A stretch of DNA of 64,000 bases, taken from NCBI GenBank assembly GCA_052426225.1, contig JBNJNM010000023.1, positions 434,001-498,000 on the forward strand, in the 5' to 3' direction. Positions 10,497 to 57,967 of the stretch are shown one piece after another (the first letter of the stretch is position 1; each line of letters opens with the position of its first letter). The notes beneath the pieces were generated by a model. It saw nothing but the letters and a program-made list of their open reading frames with translations. It was not told the DNA's origin and did no database searches. Origin of the DNA: Zancudomyces culisetae HAW-14-8 (Eukaryota > Fungi > Kickxellomycota). Position numbers and translations under genes: made by a program.

Positions 10497-12302
10497 TATT
10501 TGTTATCTTCAAATATACATATATATAATTATTAAGCTTAAATTATAATATTGATGACTGATTTTTTGAGAGAAAATAAAGTGAGATGTATTCTTTTAAA
10601 GAGTAATGTCTGGATTTACAACAGAAAATAAATACAGATATATAATATAATAACACTTTACAACTACAAGTATAAAAATACCAAAAAACATAAATCAGTA
10701 GTAATTATTTGTTGTGTTATTGTTGTTGTTGATATACAAATATATATATATCGTTATCCTTTTTTTCAAAAACTTAGCAATATATAAATGTGGTTTCAAT
10801 GTAAAAAAAAATTTACTAACCATTCCCTTTCACCCTCTCCCACCCTTCCATAAGCTGAGATTATGAATAAAATCAAAATAAATTGAAAAAGAAGGAATAA
10901 AGAATAGTTAAAAAGGATGCATGAATTTTCAAAATTGTATTTATGATATCAACTTGTTGCGTATATTTGGTATATGTATAAACTTTTAACTTGAAAGTTT
11001 GGTGCATTTCATAGATGGTGGTGGAGCGAGGTATTTGATGTTTTTATATTTATATTTATTGATTATACAAGTTTTGACAATAGCCAGATATTTACTTATT
11101 AAGGGACCAAAATAAAAACTCGTGCATAAAGACTACAACCAGAATTATAAATATATTTATTTTTAAAAGTAAAATATATAGACATTTGCTAAAATAAAAA
11201 AAAGGTGAAAAGAGGGGTGAAAAAAGGGGGGGAGTGAAGGGAGGAGTGTTGGTGTAAAGAAAAAGAAAACACGTTAGTTTGGAATTCATAGAATGTATTA
11301 TAAATGCATAAACAAGAAAAAACTATAAGGTGTAGATATTAAGAAGATTATAAGACCGATTGATTCACGAAAATAAAGAGGAGAATTGGTAAAACAAACA
11401 AAATATTAGGGGAAGGGGAAATGATATGAAATAAAGGGTGTAAATGTACCCATGTTGTTTTTTTGATACTATTTTTTTTTTGTAAAGCAATATAAAAGGT
11501 TGAAAAAAGTAAATAAATATGGTTGTATGAATTATATTTACATTGGTGATACAAATAGTGTGGGAGGGGAGGGAATAATTCAAACATGTATATAAAGAAT
11601 GAAAAAAAAAGAAAAAAAAGTAGGGTTTGTAAGAGTTTTTCAAAATGCTATTAAATATACATTTAAACAAAGAAAGTAAAAAGGTAGATGGGTAAATGGG
11701 TAAATGGGTAAATAGTTAGAGGTAAGAGATTAATGGTGAAATTGGTAAAAATGACAAAAATGATGAAAATGGTAAAAATGGAATGAAAAAAAAACATTAA
11801 AAAAATTGAGTATAGGCACGAAATGGGGTGTAGCGAATGAAAAGATAGGCATGGGTAAACAAATTCGTGATTTTATAAAATTGAATTGAATTCAAGTTTC
11901 GTGTTCAAAGTGGGGGGAGAGAGAGAAGGGAAAAGAGTGAGAAGAGTAATGATGAGGTGGGAGAAAGGGCGAGGGGTTGAAAAATAAAAATAAAAATATA
12001 AATATAAACAATAGCAATAATAAAAGTAAAAGAAAAAGTTGAATTGAATTGAATTAAACTGAATCGAGTTGGGTCAAGTAAAAATGTAATGAATGAAAAG
12101 CAATGAAAGTAATAGAAATAGAAATAAAAACACGAAAATTAAAAATTAAAAATAAAAAAAAGCGAAAATGCGTTTACAATGCTTAAACTAAAACCTAAAA
12201 CCTAAAACCAAAACCTAAACTAAAAGTAAAACTAGGATTAAAAGTAAAACACAAAGTAAAACTAAAAGAAGAAGGGTTTGGCAAAACATTGGACATTGAA
12301 TA

Positions 12303-12307
<5 letters not shown>

Positions 12308-12337
<30 letters not shown>
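12308..12337 (+). repeat. (GATT)n microsatellite
   Basis: ttgattgattgattgattgattgattgatt. Confidence 0.9.
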
Positions 12338-12340
<3 letters not shown>

Positions 12341-12775
12341 GTGGATATAAAAGGAAATAAACGTTTGAAAAAAGAAAAAGAGAGAGAGAGAGAAGGGTTT
12401 GGTGTTGGTGTTTGGAAGGATGGATTTAAAAATTATAAAGTTTGATTTTTTGATTATTTGATTTTTTTTTTTTGCTTTGAAATGTATTAAATCTAATATA
12501 ATTTAATATAGTTTATTAATGTTCATTATTTAAAAAAAGTATGAATATAATTTGGAATTCATAATAATAATAATAAAAAAATAAAAATAACAATTAAAAT
12601 AAAAGTGTAAAAAATAAAAGGAGAGGAGAGAGGGGAGGGGGGGGAAAGGGGGGAAGGGATAAAAAAGAGAAATCGTATAAATAAAACCGTGTTTGGAATT
12701 GAAACAAACGGATGTCAAATAAAATAAAATAAAAATAAAATAAAATAAAAAATACACATATACATATATACGCAT

Positions 12776-12813
12776 TATAGTATAGTATAGTATAATATAG
12801 TATAGTATAGTAT
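12776..12813 (+). repeat. (TATAG)n pentanucleotide repeat upstream of ORF 12843
   Basis: tatagtatagtatagtataatatagtatagtatagtat. Confidence 0.85.
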
Positions 12814-12842
12814 AACAGTAGATATAAGGATAAAAATCAAAA

Positions 12843-13355
12843 ATGGCAGCATCAGCAACAGCGACAGCAACAGGGGCAAAAGAATCATCAGATGTACGTA
12901 GGTCAGGGCGAGTCCGGGCAGCGCCAGGACCTGGATACGTGCCAGATATGATAAAACGCACACAGACACACAAGCGGCGGTCCAGAGTGACCAAAAAGGA
13001 GGCGCCCAAGTCTAAAGTGGCCAAGAAGGTTCAATCAACCAAGACAACCGACAAGAAGAAGAAGAAGAAGAGCAAGAAGGTTGCGGGAACAAAATCGCCA
13101 TCCTCAGGAGCAGTAGCAGCAAAGTCATCCTCGGGAGCAGAAGCAGAAGCAACAGGAACAGGAGCAGCAGCAAAGTTGAAAAGTTCTGGAAGAACAAGAG
13201 CAAGAGGAAAAGGAGACAAGAAGGCCAAAGTTGATACCAAGACAAAAGGTGGTGCAAAAGCAAAAGGAAAAGGTATGGTAGTGTCAAAGGGAAAAGTAAC
13301 AAAGAAAAAGGCAGTAGCACCAAAAACCACCAAAAAAGTTACCAAGACCAAATAA
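12843..13355 (+). CDS. Small, very basic Lys/Ala/Thr/Gly-rich protein with histone H1-tail-like composition; function unknown
   Basis: 170-aa ORF with AAAATGG start context, clearly GC-richer than the flanks, containing poly-Lys and K/A/P/T-rich segments. No globular H15 domain is seen. Confidence 0.65.
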   Translation: MAASATATATGAKESSDVRRSGRVRAAPGPGYVPDMIKRTQTHKRRSRVTKKEAPKSKVAKKVQSTKTTDKKKKKKSKKVAGTKSPSSGAVAAKSSSGAEAEATGTGAAAKLKSSGRTRARGKGDKKAKVDTKTKGGAKAKGKGMVVSKGKVTKKKAVAPKTTKKVTKTK

Positions 13356-13667
13356 ACAAACTAATAGGGTGCGTTTTTTGTCTTGTGTTGTGTTGTGTTG
13401 GCAGTTTAATAATGTAGTGATAATATAGAGTTATATATATTTCTTACTCTAGTGTAATTTTCTAAAAATAGTATTATTTTGGATATTTCAAGTCTTTTTT
13501 CATTCTTTTTTCATTCTTTCTTGTTTTTTTTTTAAAAAAAAAAAAACTTCCCCCTTTATTATATATATAAATTTATAATTAATAAATATATTTATTTAAT
13601 TAATTAATTAACTAACTAATCAGTCAATTAATTAATTAATTGATTCAAAAAAAAAAAAAAAAAAACT

Positions 13668-16600
13668 TCAAGAACCAACAACAAGACGAGGTGCAATATT
13701 CATCGCCATAAGTTCTTGGAAAAGTAGTTTGCAGGCATAAGGCATATGAACTTGAGAAATATCAGTATGGTTGCGACAACCACGACATTCAAAAAAGTTC
13801 TTTTTAAGCGAGGCAATGGCAATCAGGCCACAACGGTCACAGACGTGGATGCGGTAGGCATCAGAGACAGCAAACAGGCGTTCTTTTAGGAAATTGGAGG
13901 CGCCGTGAGAAATCATACAATCACGCTCCATTTCACCGAAACGCAGACCGCCATCACGCGAACGGCCCTCGACGGGCTGGCGGGTCAGGATCTGCAGGGG
14001 CCCACGAGCTCTGGAATGGATTTTGTCGTCGACCATGTGTTTGAGGCGCTGGTAGTAGGTGGGGCCAAAGAAGACTTGGGAATAGAGTTTGCGGCCGGAA
14101 TGGCCATTGTACATAACCTCGAGGCCGCGGGAATGGTAGCCCAGAGAGAACAGTTCGGCGGATATGGCATCGACAGTGACGTCGGTAAAGGGAGAGGCAT
14201 CGGCAGCAGTTCCAACAAGAGTGGCGAGCTTGGACAAGAGACATTCGATAAGATGGCCAATAGTCATACGCGAGGGAATGGCGTGGGGGTTGATGATGAG
14301 GTCGGGGACGATTCCGTCGGCAGTGAAGGGCATATCTTCGGAAGTATAGACAATACCAATGGTACCTTTCTGGCCGTGACGACTGGCAAACTTGTCGCCG
14401 ATTTGGGGAACTCTGGTGGAGCGGACACGGACCTTGACGAATTTAAAGCCGTCGCCGTTGGTGGTCAGCAGGACCTGGTCGACAATGCCAGATTCGGTGG
14501 CACGCAGCGGCTTGGACGCATCGAGTTTGGTATGGGCAAGAGTGCGCTGGCCAAGCTCAAGCGAAGCAATGGGAATGGGAGTGGTTTTGCCAATGATAAT
14601 GTCGTCGCCAGTGACACGAGTGCCGGGAGCAATGAGGCCGTCGTCATCGAGTTTTTCATAGGTTCCGATTTTGAGGCGCAGAGTCGAGGCGCGCGACGGC
14701 TTTTCAAAGCGGCCCATGGTTCGCATGCCGAGTTTGTCTTCTTCATCCATGTAGGAGCGGAAGAAAATGGAGCGGAACAGGCCACGGTCAATAGAGGACT
14801 GGTTCATGATAAGCGAGTCTTCCTGGTTGTAGCCAGTGTAGCACAGGATAGCGACAATAGCGTTTTGGCCAGCCGGCAACTCGCTAAACTTGATGTACTC
14901 CATAGCATGAGTGGTTGCAAGAGGTTTCTGCGGATAGTAGAGAAGATTGGCAAGAGTATCCATTCGCACTTGATAGTTTGTCAGCAGAATTCCCATGGCT
15001 TGTTTTCCCATAGCAGATTGATACGTGTTACGAGGAGACTGGTTGTGGTCAGGGAACGGAACGATGGACGCACAAATACCCAGAATCATTGAAGGATGGA
15101 TTTCACAATGCGTCCAAGTTGTTATGCCAATGTTGCGGCGCGACCTGATACGCCCGTCGTCCTTGGGAGGCAGTTGGCCGGTATGCACAAAGCGGCGAGA
15201 CTCGTCTAACTCGTGCGGACTCATAACGATCATGGCTGTTTCTTCTTCCTCAGCATCCAGATACTCCACAATCCCTTCCGACAGCAAATCGTGCCATCGC
15301 ACCGCATCGCGCTCGCCCAACCGCCGCGCCTCAATCGCCGCCACCACGGGCTTGGTAAGAGCCAGCCGCATGTGGTTGACTACAAACAGCGGACGACACA
15401 CCCGGCCGGCATCCGTCAGAATCCGAATCTCGCGTTCTCGTACATCGTGCACAATACTCAGCTCATACGAAAACTCCAGTCGGCGTCGCAGTTGCTTGAG
15501 TGTCGCAGCTAGCCGCACCGCCTCCTTGTGGATGCCAACCCATACTCCGTTGACAAAGATTTTGGTGCTGTCGGCCAAACTGTCGCCTACCAGCTCTTCC
15601 AGATTCTCCATCGCCCACTCCTCCAAAAACATCAGAATCGACCCCGAATCCGACCCAACTGTGATATGCGCCATCAACGCCAGATTCTTCACCAGCCCAC
15701 ACGCCTGGCCCTCCGGTGTCTCCGCCGGACACACCAGCCCCCAATGTGTATTGTGCAGCTGCCGTGGCTTTGCGATCTTGCCGTCTCGTCCTATCGGCGT
15801 GTTACATCGCCGCAAATGCGACAGTGTCGATGCAAACGTATACCGATTCAACACCTGCGCCACCCCCGTTCGGCTCTGCATCGCCTTTTTCTGGTCGCCC
15901 CAGTTTCCTGTTGCCAGCGAATACTTGAGTCCCGCTGTAATCGTGTTGGATTTAAGCGCCATGCTCAGGTTGAACTCTCGTCGGCTCTCTATACATTTCT
16001 GCAAATACCGTGTCATGTCCCGCGTCATCTTTTTAAACAAATTGCGGAACAGCATCGCCAGCAACGGCCCTGCCAAATCCAACCGCTTCCGTCCATAGTG
16101 GTCTCGATCATCCTGGTCTCGTCGCTCCAACACACACTGCAACAACCGGTGGACCATATATCCCAAAAAGTATGTCTTGCGCGTCTCATTGTGTGGCTGC
16201 GTCCCTACATGTGGCAAAAACTCCTTTTGCAATATCTCTCGTGCATATTTAATTCGCTTCTCTCGGTTCACTCCCACCGTTGTTCCTCGCTTTCCAATAA
16301 AATCCAAACTGACCTCGCGGTCTTGAATTACAAACGCCTCCTCAATCGACGCCTTGAACTCTTCTACCATCTCGCTATCATTGCTATCATAACATATATG
16401 CTCCAAAATATCCTTGGCCGCTACTGTCCCCAGCGCCCGGAATACCACCACTACTGGAACTTCGCTGCGAATATACGGAATCGTCGCTTGGATCCCTTTT
16501 CCTCCGCCCCCTCCACTACGCCCAAACTTCTTTAACATTAATGTACTCGCCTGCCTGCTTGCCCCTTCCATTGCACTGCGGATCTCCGCTGTATAGTGTA

Positions 16601-17366
16601 GATTTGGAATCTTCTTTTTGAACACCAACACCGTGTTGGTTGCTATTCGTTCCTGCGCAATCAGGACTTTTTCCGACCCGCTAATTATAAAATATCCTCC
16701 TTGGTCATATGGACACTCCCCGACTCCATACATTTCCGCCTCGTTCAATCGATCTAGTAAACAGTAGTTGCTTCGTAACATAATCGGTATCTTTCCAATA
16801 AACACCTTGCGGAAATCTCGCTCGCTATCTTCTACTTCCTCCATATACATATCCGCCACTGACGTCAGCCCAGCATTCCGTTCATCTTGTGGATCCGCCA
16901 CCAACACCCGCTTGCGTACCGATACCAGCAATGGTGCCGAATACGTCAGGTTGCGCAACCGCGCCTCTTGTGGATATAATTGTTGCGAACTACCATCCGC
17001 CTCCGTCACAGCTGTCGGGGAAAGGTACACCTGTTCAAATTGAATGTGGTACCGTTTTAGCACTTCTCCGCTGTTACTACTTACGCCCGGTACACTTGCA
17101 GCTGGCACTTGTGTTTGTAGTACGAGATGTGTATTTTCATCAACAATCTCTTGTAATGTATTTTCTATAAACTCATTAAAACTTGCTATCTGCTGCCTCA
17201 CCAACCCATTCTCTTCAAAATACCTTGTAATCACCGCCCAACAATCCTCCTGTGTTATTTCTTCCTCTTCTTCTTCCTCCCCTCCTTCACCTCCTAACAC
17301 TCCTTCCCCTCCGACCCCTCCTAGTTCTTGAAATACAGTTTCTTCGTCTCCATATTCTTCCTTCAT
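13668..17366 (-). CDS. RPB2: RNA polymerase II second-largest subunit, intronless
   Basis: 1232 aa with '[16 protein letters not shown]', '[12 protein letters not shown]', '[13 protein letters not shown]', '[12 protein letters not shown]', C-terminal Zn cysteines and '[21 protein letters not shown]'. Confidence 0.99.
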
Positions 17367-17758
17367 TTTTATATATGGTTACGAATCTTTATTTTTTTAT
17401 TTTATTTTGTTTACTAATACTACTACTCTTTTAATTTTCTTGTTTTATTTATTTAGTTTTTTTTTAATTTTTTTTTAAATATTTTATTCACGTCATTCTC
17501 TCCCAACTCTTCTCACCAATTTTAACCATTTTTCTCCACTCCCTCCCCCCCTCCCTCACTTTCTCTCCACTCCCACAAATTATTGAAATTCCTCTTCTCC
17601 CAACTGTTGGTAACTTTGAAAATAATATTATTTATAAAAAAAAATTTTTTTTATTATATTTTATAATCCCCAAATAATTTCAAACCAATAAATCAACAAA
17701 ACAGACAAATAAATAGCTTTATAAAAAATAACTAAACATATTAAATCCGACTTTAACT

Positions 17759-20700
17759 TCAACTCAAACCGCGATATTTCGCTACAAATTCATCTACTGT
17801 AGCTCGAAATCGCGCCAAACTCCTACTATGCTTATACAACTCGTCTACAAACTTACCAATCGCCCCTAAATCCACCCCATACGAATTTACAGTTGCTACA
17901 CCCAGTAACGCCCCAATAATCCGCCGACTCTCCATCGTATAATGCTTCACCACCATATAAAACAGCGGCACTATATGGCCAAATGCCGATCGTGGTGCCG
18001 CCCACACCACTGCATCCAACAACCGTCCCACCATACGCTCAAGATGAGTTGTAGTTGTAGTTGTAGTTATAGTTGTAGTTGTAGTTATATTTATAGTTGT
18101 AGCAACCACACTTTCATGTGTCTGTCCTTGCTGTCCAATCCCCAAGACCAAGGCCTCATACTGTTCCCGCCGCACCACCAAGTCGCTATTAAGCTTTACA
18201 GCACTTGCAGTTGCGGCGCGGTCGTCAGTTCCCCCAAAATACTCGGTACTCCACTCCAGCACACTGTCCAGTCGGTTCAGCTGGCCCACAATATGTTCGC
18301 TAGGCAGCAAGGTCTCAACCAACCGAAACAGTGCATCTGGAACCTCTGCCATCTGCCGCACCACATCAACTCCACCACTCTGCTCTACGCCAACCTCGCG
18401 GCTCTGTACTGCCATGTTGACCATCGCATTGGCCACCCGGACAATATACCCAACCGCCTCCCCCGTTTCTCGAACAGTCCCGCCTTGCCACGCCGCCCGC
18501 CCGTTTTTGTGCGTTCGGTATAGCTGTGCAGCGGATCGCATGGCCCTCGCCAGCAACGTCATATCGTCTATCCGGCGACATCCATACGCACCAGCCAACT
18601 CCACTAGATTTACGGCACCTGGCAGCCCAAAATAAAACACGTGTGGGCCAATCCGGCTGCTCTCATCAACAAACTGCAGCACAGACTCAACAACTTGCTC
18701 ACATTCCAACGCCAATGCTGGCTGACACCCAACAACCAACGCAACTACTGCTGTTTCCAACCGCGTCCGGAACGCACTCATATACTCATCATACATTTGT
18801 GCATCGCTTGTCAGCCGCTCTATAGCCTCGCTGTCTCCTACTTGTGCACTATCCTCATCCCGCTCAGCCGGTTGTAGCCCAATACTTATTGCTACAAACA
18901 ACTCCATAGTCGCCCCAACCATCACGCCTGCCTCAAGCCGTTGCAAAAGCGGCTCTGCCAACGCCAGTGCACCCGCCACCCGCTGCATCCCTTCCAGCTG
19001 TCCAACAACTGTCGCTACTGACATCGCTATACGCCCTACCTCTCGCGTCGTAATTCCTCCACTGTTTTGGTACATTCCAACTACCATCTGTACAAGTTCA
19101 TTACTAACAGGTCCTAGCAACTCTTTGCAACTGTCACATAGACTCTTAAATGCCTTGGATGCACAAAATGATAGTTTTTGCTCGCGCAAACACATTCCAA
19201 CCGCTCGCACCGCATTCATCATCACCTCGCTGTCTCCCGTCTTGGATATCCACTCGGAATACGTTCCTATCAAATTCACCACTCCCATCTTTACATATAT
19301 TGCACTCTCTCTGTTCTCTATAATCCTCAAAAATTTACACTCTCCTTTTAACCCTATCCCAAACATTCGTGCCAATGCATAATCACTATTTGCTCTTTTT
19401 TTCTTTCCTCCTTCTTCTATTTCCCCATTTCCCACATTTTCTGCCTCTAATTCAAACCCTCCTCCTTCACCTCCTCCTTCACCTTCTCCTATTTCTTCAC
19501 TTAATGCCCTAATCGCATACATCAAACTCTCCAATTCTTGCCACCGACCTACTCCCTCTACAATCAATCTATCCCCAATCCCTCCAACTAATCCGATCAC
19601 CATTTCCTCTCGCAACATATGATAGCTGCTCAGTATTACCTCGACTGCTTCCCGTCTAAACCCATAAAACTTCTCTTTGCTTTCTTTATCATATTCCGCC
19701 CACTTTTCTTGTTCGGGATATTCTATCTTTGTTACTAGTCCCTTTAACAACTTGCGATATTTCTCTTTTAACACAAATTCTATCATTGCCATACTTTCAT
19801 TTTCTCCTTCTTCTCCTCCTTCTCCTTCTTCTCCTCCTCCTCCCCTTTCAAGTTTATAATCTTCATATTCTTCATAAAAATTACTCCAAAACCCTAAAAA
19901 TTGATAACTAATCTCCTCGTCCTCGCCATACTGCCCCCCAATCACTGTCAGTCGTATCATTATATCTATCAGCCGCCCAGTCCTCTCTCGATACTCTTCA
20001 CTCTCTCCCATCTTTTTGATATTCCGTGTTGTATACATTTCTAAATACTCTCCTACCAACTCGCCTACTTTCTTTCCAAACTCCATAAACTCCTCCACTC
20101 GCCCAATTATTTCATATATCCAATCACGACTTAACTCCTCTAATCCTACCACCTCCATTGTCTGTCCATAATACTTGTACATTTCCATCGATCCAAACAA
20201 CTCTTCCTGAAACTCAAATATTCCTCTTACTTGCTCCGACTCCAATACCATCTCAATATCCCCACGCTGTCGACCTGCAATCACTAGCTCCTCCATTTGT
20301 CTACTCCCCAGCCGTATTGTCTCTTCAACCACCTGTTTCTCTGGTCGACCCGCAACCACCCATTGCCTCAACCCTTGCCACGCCCTCAAACCATCCTCGC
20401 CAACTCCTCCCCATTCTCGTATGCTCTTTTCGTGTCTTTTGACTATTACTTCAACCAGCTGTCTAATTACTCGCCCACTACTCTCTATTACTTGTTGATC
20501 TATTGCAACCCTACAATTATCCACAACCACACAAGTTTTTTTTTTTTTAATAAAAAACAAATCATAAAATATCCTTGGAAAGCGTTAAAACACACGAGTC
20601 AAAACCAAATAATAATATATTAACCCTTACTGCTTGTTTTCTGATATCCTCTCCGCCTCTTCTATATACACACTAACAAACTCCACAACCATATTTTCCT

Positions 20701-47260: not shown

Positions 47261-47285
47261 GTGTGTGTGTGTGTGTGTGTGTGTG
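47261..47285 (+). repeat. (GT)n microsatellite
   Basis: gtgtgtgtgtgtgtgtgtgtgtgtg. Confidence 0.95.
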
Positions 47286-50500: not shown

Positions 50501-50811
50501 TCATCAGCACTACCGTCATTTTTTTTACTATCATTACTATTACTATTGTTGCTTTTGCGCTGCCTAATAATCTTGTAGTACAAACTTATGGCACTATTTT
50601 CCATTGTGATTCCACGTTGTTGCTCGTCCTCCCGGAAATCAAGGTACCGTGCCTGCCCCGCAATCCTAGTTGAAATAATCCCATTTGTTGCCACTAGGGT
50701 ATCTCCAAGTGTTGTCTTGCCGTGATCCACGTGTGCTATGATACAAATATTGCGAATATTTTTTGTGTTTTCTTGCAGACGCCTCAAAATTTCTGGTCGA
50801 ATTGGCCCCAT
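47551..50811 (-). CDS. EFL1: Elongation factor-like GTPase 1 (60S maturation), intronless
   Basis: 'NIRNICIIAHVDHGKTT', 'DEQQRGIT', 'INLIDSPGHVDF', 'NKVD', 'GELHLQRC..DL..RFA', and the Efl1/Ria1-specific C-terminus 'DPFWVPTT..ELEDLG..AD..N.AK.YM..VR..KGL...KIV..AEKQRTLKK'. Confidence 0.97.
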   Translation of the reverse strand: MGPIRPEILRRLQENTKNIRNICIIAHVDHGKTTLGDTLVATNGIISTRIAGQARYLDFREDEQQRGITMENSAISLYYKIIRQRKSNNSNSNDSKKNDGSADDQKNKNIEAGVEGQEYMINLIDSPGHVDFGGEVSTATRLSDGALVVVDAVEGVCPQTITVMRQAWGEKVKMILFINKVDRLIAELKLTEAEGYLRLQKVIEQANAVLGGFWTADKMEEMELEELKEAEEAEEAGDGEGNQVGKKSQKKKSKSKEEEEEDDRKVYFNPTEGNVIFGSAAEGWGFRVRDFARMSWEKLGVASEEELEKGLWGDFYLEVKNKQKRIVERKNRAMATQSKSATGGKNFGSAKQEGRPLFVEICLKSIWKVYEDTMVKFDIEKVEKIMERVGITKRDVYFMRNLNRVKEGGGSNNIKKELMKDIMQRWLPLAQSCLITVIEKVPGPMEAQYEKYRPSINSDNKEIEIGKMLQESSKDSENKVAIISKMISTQRKSIVKERIQMTAEQMRAMGRRQRVENKAERQDVEEKGEEKEQEEEKEDENEEIMMGIGRVISGTVVSGEEVWLVTAQESRKMEIKSLYLVMGNEYIAVEKVSAGNIFGIGGVETYIDVEQEINRQEYVMVKLPANDNLEDKEEEKEKEKETANKVANYLQSTLAGSKSAQSSVAVVAPPIVTVSLEPIDISQYDQLRVGLERLEMADKSVRVEHHHSSGEYLLSATGELHLQRCVKDLTERFAKCQIHVGEPSVPFRETITSLPAIVSQQHLSADSDAGSKQFGLGTATVSTPNNHVTLSFTLEPLPETVVDYLTTSAVSSSQPQSQASLSFKHKAQTVQSMLASSNHSSRLLAFGPNSAPPPTNVLLASPSALDSLAGLSTGSDLLLQALATAFQLATSAGPLCAEPMVGICVSISSITFSTDSSFSTSALSGQLITLFRDAIKSSFLTYSPRLMLATYRVNIQAPLASVGKVYPVILRRKGRILSEDILDYSPDIFCISASLPVIESFGLVDEIRSKTSGDALPQLFFSGFDPLDLDPFWVPTTIDELEDLGTVADKANLAKYYMDLVRTKKGLFVSDRKIVSSAEKQRTLKK

Positions 50812-51094
50812 GTTTGCAAATGTATTGTTGTCTATGTATATTCTTCTAGAGTGTGTCTGTGTAGTTGTTTGAATGTTAATTATACGGTTGGGATCAAATT
50901 CCGGTTCAAGTTTATTAGTTTGACCTTGGTGGTGGAGGAATAAGAGAGCTTAAATAGGAAAATCAAACTATAATTTATGCATTAATTCAAAAAAATTTTT
51001 TTGGCTATTTAATATTTGCAAGTTGAACCAACAGTTTTCATGGATAAAAGCTGCGGAGTTATTTATCACCCTTTACAACCAAATATAAACCATA
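50812..51094. promoter_or_regulatory. Probable bidirectional promoter between head-to-head EFL1 and NSRP1-like genes
   Basis: Only 283 bp separate the divergent ATGs, with a central A-tract/T-tract palindrome-like sequence (caaaaaaattttttttgg, about 50988-51004). Confidence 0.5.
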
Positions 51095-52279
51095 ATGAAG
51101 AAACATCACAAAGATAATCCCCAAAAGCTAAAATATGGCTTAAACATTACGAAAGCGAAACCTGCGCAGCAACTCCAACAAAAATCCTCGGTGTTTCAGG
51201 ATGAGACCTTTTCTTCTGGACCCAATCCAATATCCAAAAATACAAGCACTTCAAAACTCCAGACTACAAACTCAGGTGCTGCGAATAAGAAACCAAGACT
51301 AGAAAACGAAAATAATGTAGATCCAAGCATCTATGCTTACGATGAAGTCTACGATGCAATTAAAGACGCTCAGGCACAATCGGCAACACCCTCCTCCTTC
51401 TCACACTCTAATGATTCAAGTAACAAAGATGGCCACAACGGTGAAAAACCTAAACCTCGATACATTCAAAATCTAATCAACAGTGCAAGTGTTCGCAAAA
51501 TCGACTTGTTAAAAGCCAAAGAACGAAAAGTCCAAAAGGAGCGGGAGGCAGAGGGCGATCAATTTGCGCACCTGGAGAAATTTGTTACTAGTGCGTACAA
51601 AGAGCATTTGGATTCACTCAACCTGTTTGACGAGGAGGGCAATGCTGCAGCCTCTGCACCCGGATCTGAGCTTGATAATTCCAAAAAGAGTTTTGTCGAC
51701 TTTTTCAGTAACGAGTCGAATGCACTTGTCGACACTGCCAAAGATGCTGTGCGATCGGAGAATATTCGACTTGATTATAGGGAACCCAAGCCACATCTGG
51801 ATCTTGATAGTAAACATGGGTATCAAGATGACACTAGTGCTACCAAAACAGCCAGAGACACAGATTCTCCAGGTGCACAAACAAAGGTTCTTTCCACCAC
51901 CACCGATCCTTCTCTGCTATTAAATGATGACAACCAAGTAGTAGACAAACGGCAGCTTTTGAAAGCTGGTCTAAACATTACAGCCAAGCCCTCATCCAAA
52001 TCTAGAGCTCCACATTCTCGCTCACACCCATCATCGTACTCTTCTTCTTCCGCTTCTTCCTATTCATCTTCGTACAGGAGGTCCACTCACCACGATCGAA
52101 ATTCTGACGTCAGGAACGAACGGCCTACTTCACCTGGTGTTTCTTCAGGATCTGCGCACGATAAAAAGGACCAGTCCAAGGAACACTTGTTGACTCAAGG
52201 TCTTACTTCAACATCTTTGACTACTGATAAAGTAGAGAGTGCCCGGCTGCGATATTTACAGCGCAAAAAGAAGGCTTGA
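51095..52279 (+). CDS. Nuclear speckle splicing regulatory protein 1 (NSRP1/CCDC55, DUF2040)-like
   Basis: 'LKYGL', 'DPSIYAYDEVYD', 'KPRYIQNL...A..RK', 'ERKVQKEREAEGDQF...EKFVTSAYKE', 'VDKRQLLKAGLN' and C-terminal 'SARLRYLQRK'. Confidence 0.85.
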   Translation: MKKHHKDNPQKLKYGLNITKAKPAQQLQQKSSVFQDETFSSGPNPISKNTSTSKLQTTNSGAANKKPRLENENNVDPSIYAYDEVYDAIKDAQAQSATPSSFSHSNDSSNKDGHNGEKPKPRYIQNLINSASVRKIDLLKAKERKVQKEREAEGDQFAHLEKFVTSAYKEHLDSLNLFDEEGNAAASAPGSELDNSKKSFVDFFSNESNALVDTAKDAVRSENIRLDYREPKPHLDLDSKHGYQDDTSATKTARDTDSPGAQTKVLSTTTDPSLLLNDDNQVVDKRQLLKAGLNITAKPSSKSRAPHSRSHPSSYSSSSASSYSSSYRRSTHHDRNSDVRNERPTSPGVSSGSAHDKKDQSKEHLLTQGLTSTSLTTDKVESARLRYLQRKKKA

Positions 52280-52740
52280 TATACAATTATGTCTTTTAAT
52301 ATGTTTTTCTCCTCTTTTGGTTTGCAAAATAGATTTTCCTTCTTTACTCTTTGTATTTTATTGTTTATTTAAAATTTTCAGCTTGTAACATTTATTTAAG
52401 CCTGACTAGTACTCGTTTGCTACTTTGTTTTTATTACTTGGGGGGGATACATACGTATAGAATATAATCTACACATTCGATCCAAGAAATAACAATATAA
52501 ACAAAAAAGCATGAATGCTCGAAAGCTAGGTGATTTATTTAATACAAGTTTTAGTCAACATATATACAAATTTTAACAGCAATAAATCGGTTGTATGTTG
52601 TAGCTGGTAAAATCTAAACCAACAAACAAAATATATCTAGATACTATCCTGAAACGCTTGGTAGTTTTGTTTGCAAACGCTACTCAACTCACCATCACTC
52701 ACAAATATTCACACCCCTTCCTCCTTTCCCGCTTCCATCA

Positions 52741-54096
52741 CTAATTCTGCAAAATATCCAAGTGCTTTTCCATTTTTTCAATTTCTTTTCTGACAAATTC
52801 ATTTAGTCTACCTACAATAACAGGGTCATATGCTTTCATATGATTGTTTATTGGGAGCTCCATTATTGGGACTGGTAATCGCCGTCTTGGAAATGAGGTA
52901 TTGTAGCCTCTTGTGTTATTTCTTCCAGGAATTGATGCACCTACCCCTGTCTGAGAAAGACCCGATCTAGTAGGTGATGTAGAACTGCCCAGAAATTTGG
53001 AATATGTATAACAGCTTCCTAACGATGTTATATCTATTACACTTCGTATCGGATCATTGTAGTATGGCAATAGAGAGTCCAGTGTTATACTTTCCCTGGT
53101 TATCGACAAGCTGTTGATATCGTACATGTTTTTGGGATCAAGTCGCTGCCACGATGCCCAAACAAGATCAATCATCGAGTGATGCATAAAAAACAGGACA
53201 CTACGTGATTTAGTTTTCATTATCACATCTTTTCTTGTATTCCAGAAACTTTTTATTGTGTGTAAATATACATAACATTGTTAAACTTACTCTGTAGGAG
53301 CCCACATTTCCATCATATCGCCACCAACTCCCAAGTGTACCACTCCATGACATCCATTTTCAATATTTGGTGAAAAATCACTAAATGTGTTGGATGCCTT
53401 GGATATGTTTATTACTGCCTCTTCGGGCCAGAACGAGCCTGGTGAATTCCCCTGTTTATAATTTCTAGTTATACAGCTGTAATTTGGAAAAGATTTCATC
53501 CAGCTGGCCTGGAACCCGTCCAACAGGCATTTATCGGGACCAATTCCATTGCCACCAAACATATAATTACTTAATGCTCTTGTGTTTTCAGGTGCATCCC
53601 AACCAATTGACCAATCCTATTTATTATTTGTTTGTGAGTATACTTTATTTTCCCACTCTTAGTTTCAACAATTATTATGTACTTCCCACTCTAAACCCAA
53701 AATAATAAAATGAAATATGTTCATTAAATATATAGACAGTAAAATAAAACTTACCCAGTATGGAATAGTTACATTTGGATTTACCATTTGAAGTAGCGAT
53801 TGGAAATGCATAACAAACCTTCTATGCCATGGTAAAAAAAACCCATTTCCATGGATTTCTACAGCATATCCTGTATGTATCTTACTCAGTTCTTCAAGCC
53901 AGCCCCGTTTTTTTACCTCATAACAAGCCCTCACAAAGTTGCTCCATTCAAGAGGCGTCATTTCGTTAATCTCTTTTCTCATCACCGGACTCGCCGTACA
54001 CTGCGTACTTGTTAGTGGTGGTGTGGGTACATTCTGTGCAATACTAGGGTTCAATACCCAAAATATTAGAATTAGTAGTATCGAAATACCAACCAT
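52741..54096 (-). CDS. Secreted tyrosinase (type-3 di-copper); exons 54096-53755, 53616-53291, 53200-52741
   Basis: Signal peptide; 'RKEINEM'; CuA 'IH.....IHGNGFFLPWHRRF'; spliced 'IPYW|DW'; CuB 'ENGCHGVVHLGVGGDM...WAPTD|VLFFMHHSMIDLVW'; 'CYTY'. Introns keep frame. Confidence 0.9.
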
Positions 54097-55811
54097 TTCC
54101 TTTTATTCGTTATGTGTTTAGCAATTATTATCATATAGTGTACTGTAAAAAGTACAATTGGATCATTGAAAGAGTTATTTATTAAAACATCAATGTTTCT
54201 TTTAAACTTTGAATTATACATTTATCGAGCAACATCTTTATAAGCTATATATAAATAATATGTATATCGTTTGTATTTTGAAAACGGAGCCTTTGCTGGA
54301 TTCTCCAGAGGTACAATGTATTGATCTAGAGCTGGTGAGAGTATTTTAACTAGCTAGATAATATCCTAGCTATCGCCATTTCTAGATCAAATGCATCTTT
54401 ACAACTATTCGTATTTCGGTAGCTTTTGGTGCTGGAAACGTACACTCCAGATCTTAAACCTTTGTATCGGGCACGAAAAATAATAAGGACAGGGTATGAG
54501 CCTCAATTCTTTTTTTTCAATGGCTTGTACTTTCCAACCACCATTTTACCATTTTATCACTTTGCCACATCAACCATTTACACCGCTTCCCCTACTCCTC
54601 ACCCAACTTTTTCTCCTCAATTCCTTCCCTTTACCTCGCTCCTCACCCCCGCATTATGATTTTTTGTGAGTTTAGTTGGCTGATTCTCTATTTTTTTCTT
54701 TCACCTCTGCAAACCACCCACCAACTCCCGTAGTTATATAACTCGTCTTCTTTTTTGAGAAGCCCATTTCCCAAAAAATCAAGAAAATGGGGGAGGGGAG
54801 GGGGAAAGGAAAGTGGGTTATACCGAACATTCTATTGCTAAACCGATAATCCGCACATTGATTGAGGATATTTAGTGGTTGCCAAATTATCATTCTATGG
54901 CCCGGAGTCTTGTCTAAACTAAAAATATCTTTTGTGATTGATCAAAGACACTACTATTTCCCGCCCCATTTTTATCTTCCACTTTTCCGTTTTACTAGAG
55001 TTTAAAATTGTACTTCTTTTTTTTTGTTTCTCAGGCTAGAATACTTAACAGTGAAGAGTATACTCGAACGTTACGACTAGCCAACTTGGCCCATCTTTAG
55101 CAATAAAAAGACATACCAGGTAAAGTTGCCTCCGGGTTGGGTCTCAAAAATAATACTTTATTCAAAAAGCAAAAAAATGCTGTTTTTTATGCCTATATCC
55201 CCAATATTAGACACGTTTTGGTATAACTAGAGCGAGTAAACTTTATTATTTCTGACTTTTCGGGAACAAGTGCTCAAGAATAGCAAAAATGTAGATGGTT
55301 TTTATTGTTTTCCAAGCAACCACTTTGGTAGGTATCCCCACCCAGAACTATCCAAGCTGTTAAGTAGAATATTGTAGCACAATCTACACTAGTTAAATAG
55401 CGTACCACGATTTTGTATGAGTAAAGCAAGTACATGGACTATAACCTAACTCAAATTTTTGCTATAGGGCAAGGACTTAGAGTTGTGGAGGAACCAAAGG
55501 TTTAGGGTATCAATCTGTGGTTATAAAGAAACCACGTTCTTCTAAAAATGGTCTGGAGCTCAGAAGTCGACAAGGAGTTACCAGTTGTTTTTGCAGCTTT
55601 CCCGATAACGCAACCCTTGATCGCGGATTTGAAACAAGCAAGGTCATTCGAATAACAAGTGGATTTGTTCCACCAACAGAATCACAGCATTGAGATAGTG
55701 GTGGATTGGGTTGGTTGAAAATCAATCAGATTCCAGAATAAAAAGCAATAGCAACATCTTTGCTGCAAGTTCGTCCTTTGCAGAACAGAACCACGAAAAT
55801 ATATAAAATAA

Positions 55812-57348
55812 ATGGAATTTTGGGGTGCAAGAATTCTGAGCAAACACACAAGAGGTCGATTAGCAAGAAATGTAGTCACTAAAGCGGAAGGCCTGGTTGA
55901 AAAAATACAGGTAGATCACTTGGTAATAGGTGCGGGAGTGGTTGGGCTGGCAATAGCTAGAGAACTTAGCCAAAGGAGCAAAACTGAGTCTGTATTGTTG
56001 GTCGAGAAGAATCGAAGGTTTGGAATGGAGACGAGGTAAGGGATGTTCTAGCAGAGCGATTTGATAGCAGAAAATTTGATTCTAGATTCGAAATGCTTTG
56101 AATTATTTTATTATATTTATTGTCGAATGTAAATAGTTCAAGAAACAGCGAGGTCATACATGCAGGTATATACTATCCAGAGAACTCGTTGAAAACGCAA
56201 CTATGTATCGAAGGAAATAGAATGCTATATGAGTACTGTCGAAAAATGGAAATTCCACACAGAAAGATAGGAAAATGGATAGTAGCAGCAAGCGGTTCTA
56301 ACAGCGAAAGAGCGTATTTGGAGAAAATTCACAAAAAATCACAGAGAATTGGAGTAGAAACAGAACTGATCAACATAAAAAGTCTCAGGAATAATAAAGC
56401 AAAAGGGGTAGGCGAGGGATTGTTGGGTGGGTGTTTAAAGGCTGATAGTATCTTGAATAGCCCTACGACTGGGATACTAGATTCCCATAGATACATGGAG
56501 GCACTGAAGTATGACTTTGAGGAGAGAAATGGGGGGGTTGTATAGTCCAAATACAAAGGTGGTTGATATTGAGCGAATGCCTGGAGGTATGGGAAAGGGT
56601 GGTGGTTCAGGATACAGAGCATTGGTAAAAACCAATGACCAGGAAAACCCGTACCTAGAGATTGAGACTGGGACAGTAATAAATAGCGCAGGCCTGTGGG
56701 CAGATACGGTGCATAACTTGTGTCTGGAAAGGTTGGGGCTGTATAAGTCATCGAATGTCATTAAATACAGATTTGCAAAGGGAAAATATTATTTATATCA
56801 ACCCTCGCATTCCAGCCATAAATACGACAAAAAAAATAGTTACAAGTCCAAGATATTAGCAATAAACAAGCTTATATACCCGGTTCCTGATGAAAACTTG
56901 AGCGGATTGGGGGTTCACCTGACTCTTGATTTGGGTAATCAGATAAAGTTCGGACCAGATGTCGAGTATGTTGAAAGTAACACAGACTATTCTGTGAAAC
57001 AGGGACAAGACATTGACCAAGTTGTATGTCAGATACAAAAGTATCTGCCTGGTGTCAACAAGGAAGATCTGGTTATCGGGTACAGTGGTATTAGGTAAGT
57101 GAGAATTGTTTTTTTTATTTGTGCCTATTAGCATTGTATAAAGAATTTGAGTATAGAAACATGTAATAAATAAATAAAATTACACTAGGCCTAAGCTAAG
57201 CGGGAAGGGCGAACCTGCTAGAGATTTTTTGATTGTTGATGGAAAAGAGAAGGGGATGAGCGGAGTCATCAGTTTGCTTGGGATAGAAAGTCCAGGGTTG
57301 ACATCATCATTGGCGATTGCAAAACGGGTTCTCAAGTCGATATTTTAG
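55812..57348 (+). CDS. L2HGDH: Mitochondrial L-2-hydroxyglutarate dehydrogenase; exons 55812-56035, 56137-57094 (one-base frameshift at G7 56531-56537), 57189-57348
   Basis: FAD motif 'VIGAGVVGLAIA', 'GMETSSRNSEVIHAGIYYP..SLK', 'SPTTGILDSH', 'INSAGLWAD', 'LIYPVP....GLGVHLTLD', 'FGPDVE', 'YSGIRPKL', 'GIESPGLTSSLAIA'. Confidence 0.92.
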
Positions 57349-57967
57349 ATAGTATACTGGTTTAGGCCTGACGCAGGAGTTTCACTCTGTTGTGCTTATG
57401 GATGTCATTTACTTGTGAGTTTATTTAACCTGACACTGATAAAACTATAACAAATTATGACACAATCTCGAATTTATTGGGAACCAGTATTCAGTTGGTC
57501 AAGGAGGTAATGACTCTGTCGAAAAAAATAGTTTTAATTTTGTGATTGCCTGAAATAACAAAACTGAACACACGTTCCTTATTGTGCAGATTTCTATGAG
57601 CCCTCTGATAATTTTAATTTGTTTTACATTGGTATAGTTCAATAACACCAAGTCGAGAAACATGCATTTTAGTAGCACTGTACTTCAGTATTAATTCATA
57701 ATGGGTTTTTTTTTGCAACTTTATGCAACACATAAACTAACAACGCTCCTTGTGAGTTGAATAGAAGTGTTATTATTATCTTTAGAATGATGAAGGAAAG
57801 CTTAGATTTTGTATAAATGTCCAACGCAACCCATTCTTTGTACTAGCGAAAAACAGACAATCAAGACATCTCCACATTTTATAAACAGCAATTTAGAACT
57901 TTTAAATAGTATTCTAATAAAACTCGAGTTTGTTTTCTATTTAGCAATACAAGAAGGGGATATCGAA

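What the first reader, a model, noticed from the sequence alone, without database searches (positions are those of the whole stretch)
10800..57400. Saw-tooth G/A versus C/T strand-asymmetry domains that ignore gene boundaries: possible footprint of fixed, closely spaced replication origins
Seen by eye on the + strand: G/A-rich about 10.9-15.15 kb, C/T-rich about 15.25-23.1 kb, G/A-rich about 24.1-26.05 kb, C/T-rich about 26.05-26.65 kb, G/A-rich about 26.7-29.5 kb, mostly C/T-rich about 30.4-36 kb, G/A-rich about 46.3-48.7 kb, C/T-rich about 48.9-54.65 kb, and G/A-rich about 55.7-57.4 kb. G-to-C flips fall inside genes on either strand (RPB2, PTC2, ROM2, EFL1). C-to-G flips are intergenic. One domain can span intergenic DNA, a + gene and the 3' half of a - gene, so simple transcription bias does not explain it. 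Established: leading/lagging-strand mutation bias gives skew sign changes at origins and termini. Inference: this genome may have very efficient, positionally fixed origins every ~10-20 kb, with an unusually strong strand-specific mutation bias.
Basis: partly seen in the sequence, partly recalled or inferred. Interest (0 to 1): 0.8.

Follow-up and report, generated by a model that had tools for sequence, protein, structure and literature searches.

The report
Gene-anchored purine/pyrimidine strand skew
In the mosquito-gut fungus Zancudomyces culisetae, nearly every conserved gene switches about 60% of the way along from purine-rich to pyrimidine-rich on its coding strand, strongly enough to change codon and amino-acid use; this is an extreme, reversed form of a skew already known in fungi, and closely spaced replication origins are not shown to cause it.

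Summary
The window (Zancudomyces culisetae, contig C23) consists of purine-rich and pyrimidine-rich blocks of 0.6-8 kb. All-site GC skew reaches ±0.6-0.7. Purine skew at four-fold degenerate sites reaches ±0.7-0.9. Block edges are steps no wider than about 0.4-0.9 kb.

The unit is the gene, not a 10-20 kb replicon. In 20 of 22 conserved genes, including 8 of 8 HSP70 paralogues on four other contigs, the sense strand goes from purine-rich to pyrimidine-rich. The switch sits at about 60% of the ORF and scales with gene length. Transposon ORFs show no gradient and expanded gene families almost none. Such a switch is its own reverse complement, so it looks independent of gene orientation.

Orthologues in Smittium and Furculomyces run the opposite way, which is the direction McLean & Tirosh (2011) published for fungi.

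Pol ε and Pol δ proofreading motifs are intact, OGG1 is present, and at least six MutS-family loci are present.

Best reading (about 0.45): a strand-biased transversion pressure tied to gene activity, sign-inverted here.

The scan noted the same skew in at least 35 other notes on this genome.

The parts
10851..15225 (.). Purine-rich block R1 on the + strand. It covers 2 kb of noncoding DNA, a Lys-rich small gene (+), and the 3' 42% of RPB2 (-).
   Evidence: GC skew +0.29, purine skew +0.24 (z +15.8) over all sites. The noncoding part reaches GC skew +0.6-0.7. The left edge is a step at about 10850.
15226..23450 (.). Pyrimidine-rich block Y1. It covers the 5' 58% of RPB2 (-), the whole importin-13/transportin-3-like gene (-) with its introns, and its 2-kb upstream region.
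   Evidence: GC skew -0.37 (z -21.5). On the sense strand, four-fold purine skew is +0.6 to +0.8 in the RPB2 5' part and +0.36 to +0.67 across the importin-like gene. Its introns have GC skew +0.40.
15150..15300 (-). Purine-to-pyrimidine switch inside RPB2 (codons about 700-720 of 1232).
   Evidence: Best step lies at codon 702-710, with a 2-unit support interval of 699-723. Skew goes from +0.65 to -0.61, dLL 125. Logistic width is 100-200 bp or less.
23451..26035 (.). Purine-rich block R2: the intergenic region plus the 5' part of the PP2C phosphatase gene (+).
   Evidence: Pfam PP2C hit.
26036..26600 (.). Pyrimidine-rich block Y2 (the 3' part of PP2C). It is visible only at silent sites.
   Evidence: Neutral-site skew goes from +0.17/+0.27 to -0.52/-0.57 with a step at 26025-26050. 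All-site skew is about 0.
26601..29650 (.). Purine-rich block R3: the convergent intergenic region plus the 3' third of the ROM2-like RhoGEF gene (-).
   Evidence: The switch lies at 29625-29675.
29651..36000 (.). Pyrimidine-rich block Y3: the 5' two-thirds of ROM2 (-) plus 3 kb of upstream noncoding DNA.
   Evidence: GC skew -0.25, purine skew -0.22 (z -17.9).
45201..49010 (.). Purine-rich block R4: 2.4 kb of intergenic DNA plus the 3' 40% of EFL1 (-). Four-fold sites suggest it extends left over the septin exon from about 43360.
   Evidence: On the septin coding strand, four-fold GC skew is -0.56 to -1.0.
48950..49050 (-). Purine-to-pyrimidine switch inside EFL1. The protein composition changes here from E/K/G/M/V-rich to S/L/A/P/T/Q-rich.
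   Evidence: Step at 48950-49025, codon support 582-654. Translation.
49011..55400 (.). Pyrimidine-rich block Y4: the 5' 60% of EFL1 (-), NSRP1 (+), and tyrosinase-like exons (-).
   Evidence: NSRP1 sense-strand four-fold GC skew is -0.12 to -0.50. One tyrosinase-like exon has sense-strand third-position GC skew of +0.53 to +0.59.
55401..58400 (.). Purine-rich block R5: FAD-oxidoreductase (DAO) exons (+). It continues more weakly to 64000 over ankyrin-repeat genes (+).
10814..11260 (.). A C-tract followed by a G-tract at the left edge of R1, 320 bp from tRNA-Val (10424-10496, -).
   Evidence: Similar pairs occur at 23002-24307, 45999-46347 and 54571-54823, each near a pyrimidine-to-purine boundary.

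Best explanation
The saw-tooth is real, but its unit is the gene.

Pattern. At silent sites of conserved Z. culisetae genes, the sense strand is purine-rich (G+A) from the upstream flank through roughly the first 60% of the ORF. It is pyrimidine-rich through the remaining 40% and the downstream flank. The return jump lies in intergenic DNA. A purine-to-pyrimidine switch reads the same on both strands, so it appears to ignore gene orientation. Strong genes impose their skew on weak neighbours.

Relation to known work. This is an extreme, sign-inverted, purine/pyrimidine version of the 'opposite GC skews at the 5' and 3' ends of genes' described for most fungi.

Most likely mechanism (inferred, not shown). 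A strand-biased transversion pressure is coupled to gene activity. It has opposite regimes in the promoter-proximal and distal parts of the transcription unit. It acts on DNA, because introns and flanks share it. It is strong enough to dictate synonymous codon choice, low-complexity inserts and amino-acid composition.

What is shown: the anatomy, the anchoring on genes, the dependence on gene class, and the sign inversion relative to sister genera.

What is inferred: that the cause is mutational, and that RNA polymerase II-linked processes drive it rather than replication forks.
For: - 20 of 22 conserved genes lose purine skew from 5' to 3' at four-fold sites. The median change is -0.68, from a mean of +0.38 to -0.28 (sign test p = 1e-4). 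This includes 8 of 8 HSP70 paralogues on contigs C11, C13, C15 and C21.
- Transposon ORFs (n = 9) have a median change of 0.00 and expanded families (n = 13) -0.06. Conserved genes differ from both at Mann-Whitney p = 4e-6.
- A pooled profile of 14 genes peaks inside the ORF: +0.49 at deciles 3-4 and -0.54 at deciles 8-10. The flanks reach only about +0.19 and -0.21.
- Introns of the importin-like gene share the sign: GC skew +0.40.
- Third-position and four-fold skews flip while protein frames stay intact. Amino-acid composition follows the skew.
- Orthologous EFL1 and RPB2, and their neighbours, in four Smittium species and Furculomyces show the reverse direction (9 of 10 genes). A Coemansia locus is flat.
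- A published precedent has the Smittium direction. It affects four-fold sites, amino-acid use, promoters and UTRs. It is also seen in C. albicans, where the reported replication-linked skew is small (PMC3315797; PMC3459929).
Against: - Skew continues for 2-3 kb through apparently noncoding flanks: 10.85-12.84, 21.5-23.45, 33-36 and 45.2-47.55 kb. No RNA data exist to show that these flanks are transcribed.
- Neighbouring genes carry the 'wrong' sign for their own orientation: NSRP1, septin, and the ABC transporter in S. culicis.
- The two plateaus have nearly equal and opposite amplitudes. The switch scales with gene length (slope 0.66, r = 0.92). Two fronts converging on the gene explain this more simply than two unrelated transcription regimes.
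- No known transcription-coupled process produces a sign change in mid-gene.
- Expression was not measured. Gene class may stand in for sequence age rather than expression.
Confidence: 0.45

Rival explanations
1. Replication-fork asymmetry shaped by transcription. Replication starts in intergenic, nucleosome-free DNA flanking active genes. Forks converge inside genes, and the co-directional fork covers about 60% of the distance. One replicative strand accumulates pyrimidine-to-purine transversions. In Z. culisetae the nascent leading strand would be purine-rich. In the Smittium clade the bias would be reversed.
For: - Blocks contain genes of both orientations with one + strand skew.
- Noncoding flanks are skewed over several kb.
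- The plateaus are equal and opposite.
- Flip position scales with gene length rather than lying a fixed distance from the start or stop.
- Flips lie at 63-68% of the interval between neighbouring jumps, measured from the co-directional side, for RPB2, EFL1 and ROM2 (coordinates).
- Whole genes inside blocks are mostly co-oriented with the purine-rich strand.
- A C-tract followed by a G-tract sits at four of the five pyrimidine-to-purine boundaries in this window.
- In human cells, replication initiates mainly in non-transcribed zones and fork direction correlates with mutational asymmetry (PMC4729899 abstract; further details are from my own knowledge).
Against: - A four-fold purine skew of ±0.65-0.9 requires fork polarity and intrinsic asymmetry to both exceed about 0.7. 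That implies an efficient origin in nearly every intergenic region beside a conserved gene (my own calculation).
- The convergence points are sharp (0.4-0.9 kb or less), including a 0.57-kb block. Stochastic termination should give broad transitions.
- Replication skews reported in yeasts are about 9% in amplitude, with the leading strand enriched in A and C (PMC3459929).
- Amplitude is highest inside ORFs and lower in the flanks.
- Proofreading motifs are intact, OGG1 is present, and at least six MutS-family loci are present.
- SNPs between isolates are mostly transitions. They are rarer in skew blocks than in one unskewed noncoding stretch.
- Gene-end skews are also strong in C. albicans, where the reported replication-linked skew is small.
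Confidence: 0.25
2. Selection on nucleic-acid composition. One version is McLean & Tirosh's idea that scarce NTPs are concentrated at the 5' ends of transcripts to pace RNA polymerase II. Another is purine or pyrimidine loading of transcripts to control RNA structure or R-loops.
For: - Amplitude is largest in conserved, probably well-expressed genes.
- Skewed noncoding DNA at 45.2-47.55 kb differs between two isolates at 8 SNPs per kb, against 24 per kb in an unskewed stretch. This fits constraint.
- The hypothesis is published (PMC3315797).
Against: - Flanks, introns and oppositely oriented neighbour genes share the skew.
- Marker genes for de novo purine and pyrimidine synthesis are all present, so there is no obvious nucleotide auxotrophy: SAICAR synthetase, AICARFT/IMPCH, CTP synthase and OMP decarboxylase.
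- A sign reversal between sister genera living in the same niche is hard to explain as adaptation.
Confidence: 0.1
3. Recurrent double-strand breaks at the nucleosome-free regions at both ends of a gene, followed by 5'-to-3' resection and error-prone resynthesis. One strand is exposed and the other rewritten on each side of the break, and the two influences meet in mid-gene.
For: - The geometry is dyad-symmetric and centred on intergenic DNA, with equal amplitudes and a meeting point that scales with gene length.
- Silent-site GC is raised in several strongly skewed genes. RPB2 has GC4 of 0.5-0.72, against 0.1-0.3 in relatives. This could reflect biased gene conversion.
Against: - Blocks up to 8 kb long exceed typical resection or conversion tracts (my own knowledge).
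- GC enrichment is not needed: the HSP70 genes have GC4 of 0.24-0.40 yet flip strongly.
- SNP density is not raised in skew blocks.
- As far as I know, sexual stages are rarely seen in these fungi.
Confidence: 0.08

Closest known systems
[quoted passage not shown]
   Same: The skew is anchored on genes and changes sign between the 5' and 3' parts of the coding strand. It is seen at four-fold sites, biases amino-acid use, and extends into promoters and 3' UTRs. It is not explained by C-to-T deamination, because GC and AT skews correlate positively. The Smittium and Furculomyces loci examined here have the published direction (C-rich 5', G-rich 3').
   Different: In Z. culisetae the direction is inverted (G/A-rich 5', C/T-rich 3'). 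AT skew flips together with GC skew, whereas it is reported as flat in the paper. At four-fold sites the purine skew forms two plateaus of ±0.5-0.9 with a step at about 60% of the ORF, instead of short ramps at the two ends. The flanks are skewed for 1-3 kb, and neighbouring genes are overridden.
Replication-associated skews: jumps at S. cerevisiae and K. lactis origins, and human N-domains (PMC3459929 and the work cited there)
   Same: The sign changes are independent of gene orientation. The upward jumps lie in intergenic DNA. Domains span several genes.
   Different: Those skews have GC-skew jumps of about 9%, with the yeast leading strand enriched in A and C (PMC3459929). They show linear decay or broad termination zones and are not tied to individual genes. 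Here the skew is purine versus pyrimidine, about 10 times larger, block-like, and forms one tooth per conserved gene.
Candida albicans centromere skew jump (74% amplitude, returning to average within about 3 kb; PMC3459929 section 16)
   Same: A fungal skew jump of very large amplitude over a few kb, which its analyst judged too large and too local to be replicative.
   Different: That jump is confined to centromeres. Here the pattern is genome-wide and centred on ordinary housekeeping genes.
Transcription-coupled strand asymmetry and purine loading of coding strands (Touchon et al. 2004; Szybalski's rule; from my own knowledge)
   Same: Sense strands are on average slightly purine-rich: about +0.1 to +0.25 at four-fold sites in weakly skewed genes.
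   Different: Those biases keep one sign along the transcript. Here the sign reverses in mid-gene, and the 3' parts are strongly pyrimidine-rich.

Membership tests
Fungal gene-end opposite GC skews (McLean & Tirosh 2011) | Coding-strand skew changes sign between the 5' and 3' parts of genes, genome-wide | tested here: met
   20 of 22 conserved genes, including 8 of 8 HSP70 paralogues on other contigs.
Fungal gene-end opposite GC skews (McLean & Tirosh 2011) | Direction: C-biased at the 5' end, G-biased at the 3' end | tested here: not met
   Z. culisetae is G/A-rich at the 5' end and C/T-rich at the 3' end. The direction is met in Smittium and Furculomyces orthologues.
Fungal gene-end opposite GC skews (McLean & Tirosh 2011) | Affects four-fold sites and amino-acid usage, and extends beyond the ORF | tested here: met
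   Four-fold sites. Amino acids. Flanks.
Fungal gene-end opposite GC skews (McLean & Tirosh 2011) | AT skew roughly flat along genes | tested here: not met
   Four-fold AT skew in RPB2 runs from +0.6/+1.0 to -0.8, and in EFL1 from +0.5 to -0.8.
Replication-associated compositional skew | Sign changes coincide with mapped origins and termini | not testable with these tools
   No origin or fork-direction data were available. No sequencing runs were listed.
Replication-associated compositional skew | Neutral-site skew independent of gene orientation within a domain | tested here: met
   NSRP1 (+), the tyrosinase-like gene (-) and the 5' part of EFL1 (-) share one + strand sign. So do septin (-) and the 3' part of EFL1.
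Replication-associated compositional skew | Positions of sign changes unrelated to gene structure; broad termination zones | tested here: not met
   Flips sit at 0.39-0.82 (median 0.60) of ORFs in 13 of 13 complete genes. Transitions span 0.4-0.9 kb or less.
Replication-associated compositional skew | Type and size as in known eukaryotes (G+T versus A+C, about 0.1 or less) | tested here: not met
   The skew is purine versus pyrimidine, with amplitude 0.5-0.9 at four-fold sites, against 9% in yeast.
Classical transcription-coupled asymmetry | One constant sign relative to the coding strand along the transcript | tested here: not met
   The sign reverses in mid-ORF.
Classical transcription-coupled asymmetry | Amplitude scales with germline expression and is confined to transcribed DNA | tested here: inconclusive
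   Only a proxy was available: conserved housekeeping genes far exceed expanded families and transposons. No RNA data exist. Skew extends for kb beyond ORFs.
Mutator genotype (loss of proofreading, mismatch repair or 8-oxoG repair) | Missing or inactivated Pol ε/δ exonuclease motifs, MutS homologues or OGG1 | tested here: not met
   Pol ε carries FDIET, NGDSFD and YSVSDA. Pol δ carries FDIEC and YCLKDA. OGG1 has its N-terminal and HhH-GPD domains. At least six MutS_V loci are present. MutL, MUTYH and the TC-NER genes were not examined.

The most novel reading that the evidence does not exclude
The sequence may hold a near-saturated record of a directional process that converges inside every active gene. 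The most exciting version is a replication programme shaped by transcription, in which almost every intergenic region beside an expressed gene fires and forks meet about 60% into the gene. It would be coupled to a leading/lagging transversion bias of six-fold or more, whose sign flipped between Zancudomyces and the Smittium clade. Origin and termination maps of these fungi could then be read from sequence alone. The switch in bias would point to a change in a replisome or repair component that could be identified.
Probability: 0.22. Interest if true: 0.9.

Novelty: new variant of a known kind. Interest (0 to 1): 0.7.

Why it matters
Strand asymmetries this large (purine skew of ±0.7 at silent sites) are, to my knowledge, otherwise typical of organelle genomes, not nuclear genes.

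- **Effect on proteins.** The asymmetry rewrites synonymous codon choice within single genes. It also pushes conserved proteins such as EFL1 towards different amino-acid compositions in their two parts.
- **Effect on annotation.** This may contribute to the poor gene models and the low BUSCO scores (68-77%) reported for Harpellales. It can also mislead ORF-based gene calling, as happened in my own script and possibly in the older annotation, which splits EFL1.
- **A natural experiment.** The sign is inverted between sister genera. That offers a rare test of the unexplained gene-end skews seen across fungi: whichever factor differs between Zancudomyces and Smittium is a candidate cause.
- **If forks drive it.** These genomes would then be sequence-readable maps of replication initiation and termination.

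Tried and rejected
- **RNA evidence.** No RNA run was listed for the region, so antisense or read-through transcription could not be tested and read laying was not used.
- **More genome sequence.** The genome-wide claims therefore rest on 264 kb of contig C23, eight HSP70 loci and a few small loci.
- **Mutator hypothesis.** Pol ε and Pol δ exonuclease motifs are intact, and OGG1 and at least six MutS-family loci are present. Rejected as a simple gene-loss story.
- **Nucleotide auxotrophy version of the NTP-ramp hypothesis.** Marker genes for purine and pyrimidine synthesis are present.
- **Fixed distance of the flip from the start or stop.** Rejected. Both distances grow with gene length.
- **Shared sequence motif at the four intragenic flips.** None was seen by eye.
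- **Convergent sense/antisense transcription as the cause.** Rejected by reasoning. It needs antisense transcription to exceed sense transcription in the 3' halves of the most conserved, probably most expressed genes.
- **Twin-domain supercoiling alone.** Rejected by reasoning. Torsion has no strand polarity in untranscribed flanks.
- **A single hypermutation event, or inversions.** Rejected. The flips lie inside intact, conserved ORFs and only silent sites are saturated.
- **Translational codon selection.** Rejected. The preferred third base reverses within a gene, and introns and flanks share the skew.
- **Polarising the 239 SNPs between isolates.** Impossible without a close outgroup. Unpolarised, they are mostly transitions and show no excess in skew blocks.
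- **Automatic ORF picking by purine periodicity.** It mis-called an antisense ORF inside RPB2 because of the skew. It was replaced by the longest-first ORF list, with the genes used for the class comparison checked against Pfam.
- **Conserved flip position across species.** Support intervals overlap only loosely.

Full report
**Identity and data**

The window is G000:C23:434001-498000. Part of its EFL1 protein is 100% identical to an NCBI Zancudomyces culisetae entry. Window positions 37545-59348 are 98.6% identical to a contig of assembly GCA_001969505.1. I fetched 200 kb upstream, which gave 264 kb of contiguous sequence. No RNA run was listed.

**The observation**

- Block-wise purine excess has |z| of 7-19. 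The dispersion of 500-bp bins is 13-16 times the strand-symmetric expectation, and lag-1 autocorrelation is 0.74.
- GC and AT skews share sign, so the asymmetry is purine versus pyrimidine.
- It is far stronger at four-fold degenerate sites. RPB2 sense-strand purine skew runs +0.62, +0.70, +0.79, +0.67, +0.20, -0.47, -0.76, -0.69 in eight bins. EFL1 runs +0.49, +0.65, +0.31, -0.29, -0.73 in five bins. The importin-like gene stays at +0.36 to +0.67.
- Protein composition follows. The first 650 or so residues of EFL1 are rich in E, K, G, M, V, I and R, and the rest is rich in S, L, A, P, T and Q. At conserved sites, the replacements are those expected from pyrimidine-to-purine changes in the N-terminal part (L to I/V/M, A to G, D to E) and from the reverse changes in the C-terminal part (E to D, E to Q).
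- Boundaries are steps. Logistic widths of 200 bp or less are preferred over 400-800 bp by 4-29 log-likelihood units in the better-constrained fits. This holds at the intragenic flips (15.2, 26.03, 29.65 and 49.0 kb) and less tightly at the intergenic ones (10.85, 23.45, 26.6 and 55.4 kb).
- The profile is therefore block-like, not a linear N-shape.

**A point of logic**

A purine-to-pyrimidine switch is its own reverse complement. 'Flips occur in genes on either strand' therefore means only that, in every gene, the sense strand goes from purine-rich to pyrimidine-rich. It does not argue against a gene-linked cause.

**The unit is the gene**

- At four-fold sites, 20 of 22 conserved genes lose purine skew from 5' to 3'. 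The median change is -0.68, from a mean of +0.38 to -0.28 (sign test p = 1e-4).
- These genes include MTHFR, RPL3, a CCT subunit, an acyl-CoA dehydrogenase, RPB2, EFL1, ROM2, PP2C and septin. They also include all eight HSP70-family genes found on contigs C11, C13, C15 and C21.
- Nine LINE or gypsy ORFs have a median change of 0.00. Thirteen genes from expanded families (MFS, GH17, kinase, ankyrin and others) have -0.06. Conserved genes differ from both at Mann-Whitney p = 4e-6.
- In 13 complete ORFs the switch lies at 0.39-0.82 of the length (median 0.60). Distance from the start and distance to the stop both grow with gene length (slopes 0.66 and 0.34; r = 0.92 and 0.78). The switch is therefore not at a fixed distance from either end.
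- A pooled profile of 14 genes rises to +0.49 at deciles 3-4 and falls to -0.54 at deciles 8-10. It is +0.19 just upstream and -0.21 just downstream, fading to about ±0.1-0.15 at 1.5 kb.
- Introns of the importin-like gene share the sign (GC skew +0.40, n = 360).

**The sign is not set by each gene's own orientation**

- In the 49.0-55.4 kb block, NSRP1 (+) is pyrimidine-rich on its sense strand, while the tyrosinase-like gene (-) and the 5' part of EFL1 (-) are purine-rich on theirs.
- The septin exon (-) is C-rich on its sense strand, like the EFL1 3' part to its right.
- The importin-like gene never turns negative.
- Noncoding stretches of 2-3 kb carry full skew.
- Strong genes therefore seem to impose their skew on neighbours and flanks.

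**Relatives**

- EFL1 in Smittium simulii, S. culicis, S. mucronatum and Furculomyces boomerangus, and RPB2 in S. simulii, S. megazygosporum and F. boomerangus, show the opposite direction. Four-fold purine skew runs from -0.2 to -0.5 in the 5' part up to 0 to +0.4 in the 3' part.
- Overall, 9 of 10 long genes in these loci rise from 5' to 3'.
- The S. culicis ABC transporter is C-rich on its sense strand throughout.
- A Coemansia reversa locus is flat.
- The order importin-like gene then RPB2 is conserved. EFL1 is inverted relative to NSRP1 in Z. culisetae. RPS21 lies downstream of RPB2 only in the relatives.
- Flip positions overlap only loosely between species.

**Literature**

- I found no paper on skew in Harpellales.
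- McLean & Tirosh 2011 (PMC3315797) describe opposite GC skews at gene ends in almost all the fungi they examined: C-biased at the 5' end and G-biased at the 3' end. The skews are seen at four-fold sites, bias amino-acid use, and reach into promoters and UTRs. AT skew is flat and the correlation with expression is weak. They propose either mutation or repair specific to a phase of RNA polymerase II, or pacing by limited CTP.
- The Smittium clade therefore shows the standard fungal direction, and Z. culisetae shows the mirror image.
- Marsolier-Kergoat 2012 (PMC3459929) gives about 9% for replication skew jumps in S. cerevisiae, with the leading strand rich in A and C. She argues that the 74% jump at C. 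albicans centromeres is too large and too local to be replicative.

- Pol ε (FDIET, NGDSFD, YSVSDA) and Pol δ (FDIEC, YCLKDA) exonuclease motifs are intact.
- OGG1, two further HhH-GPD genes and at least six MutS_V loci are present.
- Marker genes for purine and pyrimidine synthesis are present.
- Between two isolates there are 239 SNPs in 21.8 kb. The transition-to-transversion ratio is about 3:1 in the skew blocks. Density is 5-8 per kb there, including the skewed noncoding stretch at 45.2-47.55 kb, against 24 per kb at 37.5-43.3 kb. There is no sign of ongoing transversion hypermutation.

**Interpretation**

The asymmetry acts on DNA, is anchored on genes, depends on gene class, and has reversed sign between sister lineages.

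I rank first (about 0.45) a strand-biased transversion pressure coupled to gene activity, belonging to the same class as the published fungal gene-end skews. My reasons:
- The Smittium pattern matches the published one in direction and form.
- The published pattern is also strong in C. albicans, where the reported replication-linked skew is small.
- Amplitude peaks inside ORFs.

- It best explains the neighbouring genes that share a block's skew, the multi-kb flanks, the equal and opposite plateaus, and the flip that scales with gene length.
- It needs near-deterministic fork polarity around almost every conserved gene, an intrinsic bias of six-fold or more, and sharp convergence points.

Selection (0.10) and break repair centred on nucleosome-free regions (0.08) are less likely.

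Only fork-direction and nascent-RNA maps, together with polarised mutation spectra, can decide between these.

**Limits**

- Expression was never measured, and gene class may reflect sequence age.
- Gene models are ORF-based.
- Genome-wide statements rest on about 300 kb.
- The relatives are sampled at two loci each at most.

At least 35 first-reader notes elsewhere in this genome describe the same skew. I treat them as agreement, not as evidence.

Noticed in passing
window 47551-52279; L023, L024, L025: EFL1 is head-to-head with NSRP1 in Z. culisetae. In S. simulii, S. culicis and F. boomerangus it lies tail-to-head, with both genes on the same strand. This implies a local inversion in the Zancudomyces lineage.
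   Followed up: partly
window 10424-13668; L040-L042: In three relatives RPS21 lies convergent just downstream of RPB2. In Z. culisetae that place holds a Lys-rich 170-aa ORF (12843-13355) and 2 kb of G/A-rich noncoding DNA, bounded by tRNA-Val (10424-10496, -). This is a synteny break at the sharp left edge of the skew block.
   Followed up: partly
L026 (GCA_001969505.1) against window 47551-50811: The older annotation calls only the C-terminal 603 aa of EFL1, plus a 279-aa 'gene' on the opposite strand over the N-terminal part. The extreme skew may mislead gene predictors. It may also contribute to the low BUSCO scores (68-77%) reported for Harpellales (PMC12611240, PMC13373617).
   Followed up: partly
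window 37545-59348: The two Z. culisetae assemblies differ by 1.4% (239 SNPs and 72 gap columns). SNP density is 24 per kb at 37.5-43.3 kb (geneless and unskewed) but 5-8 per kb elsewhere.
   Followed up: partly
window 10814-11260, 23002-24307, 45999-46347, 54571-54823: A C-tract followed by a G-tract on the + strand sits near four of the five pyrimidine-to-purine boundaries in this window. The units resemble GGGGAGGGG, and several meet a G-quadruplex pattern. These could be oriented promoter elements or origin-like modules.
   Followed up: partly
window 13668-17366 against L040-L042: Silent-site GC content of Z. culisetae RPB2 is 0.5-0.72, against 0.1-0.3 in three relatives. Local GC reaches 55% in a genome that averages about 35%. 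MTHFR, RPL3 and the CCT subunit are also GC3-rich, but the HSP70 genes are not.
   Followed up: partly
G000 contig C24 (1922, 27954, 62978, 89010, 115042): Identical family-B DNA polymerase ORFs of 701 aa recur with a period of about 26 kb on C24. This could be a concatenated mitochondrial or plasmid-like element.
   Followed up: no
G000 contigs C6 against C10 and C12: Many kinase hits occur in pairs with identical scores on C6 and C12, or on C6 and C10. This suggests large segmental duplications or retained haplotigs.
   Followed up: no
window 12185-12225: A short run of a CCTAAAA-like heptamer repeat lies inside the G/A-rich noncoding block.
   Followed up: no
C23:284001-434000 (positions 50000-200000 of the 264-kb stretch): This 150-kb stretch is rich in LINE and gypsy copies and very AT-rich DNA (GC 0.22-0.30). 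It has almost no skew, in contrast to the gene-dense flanks.
   Followed up: partly
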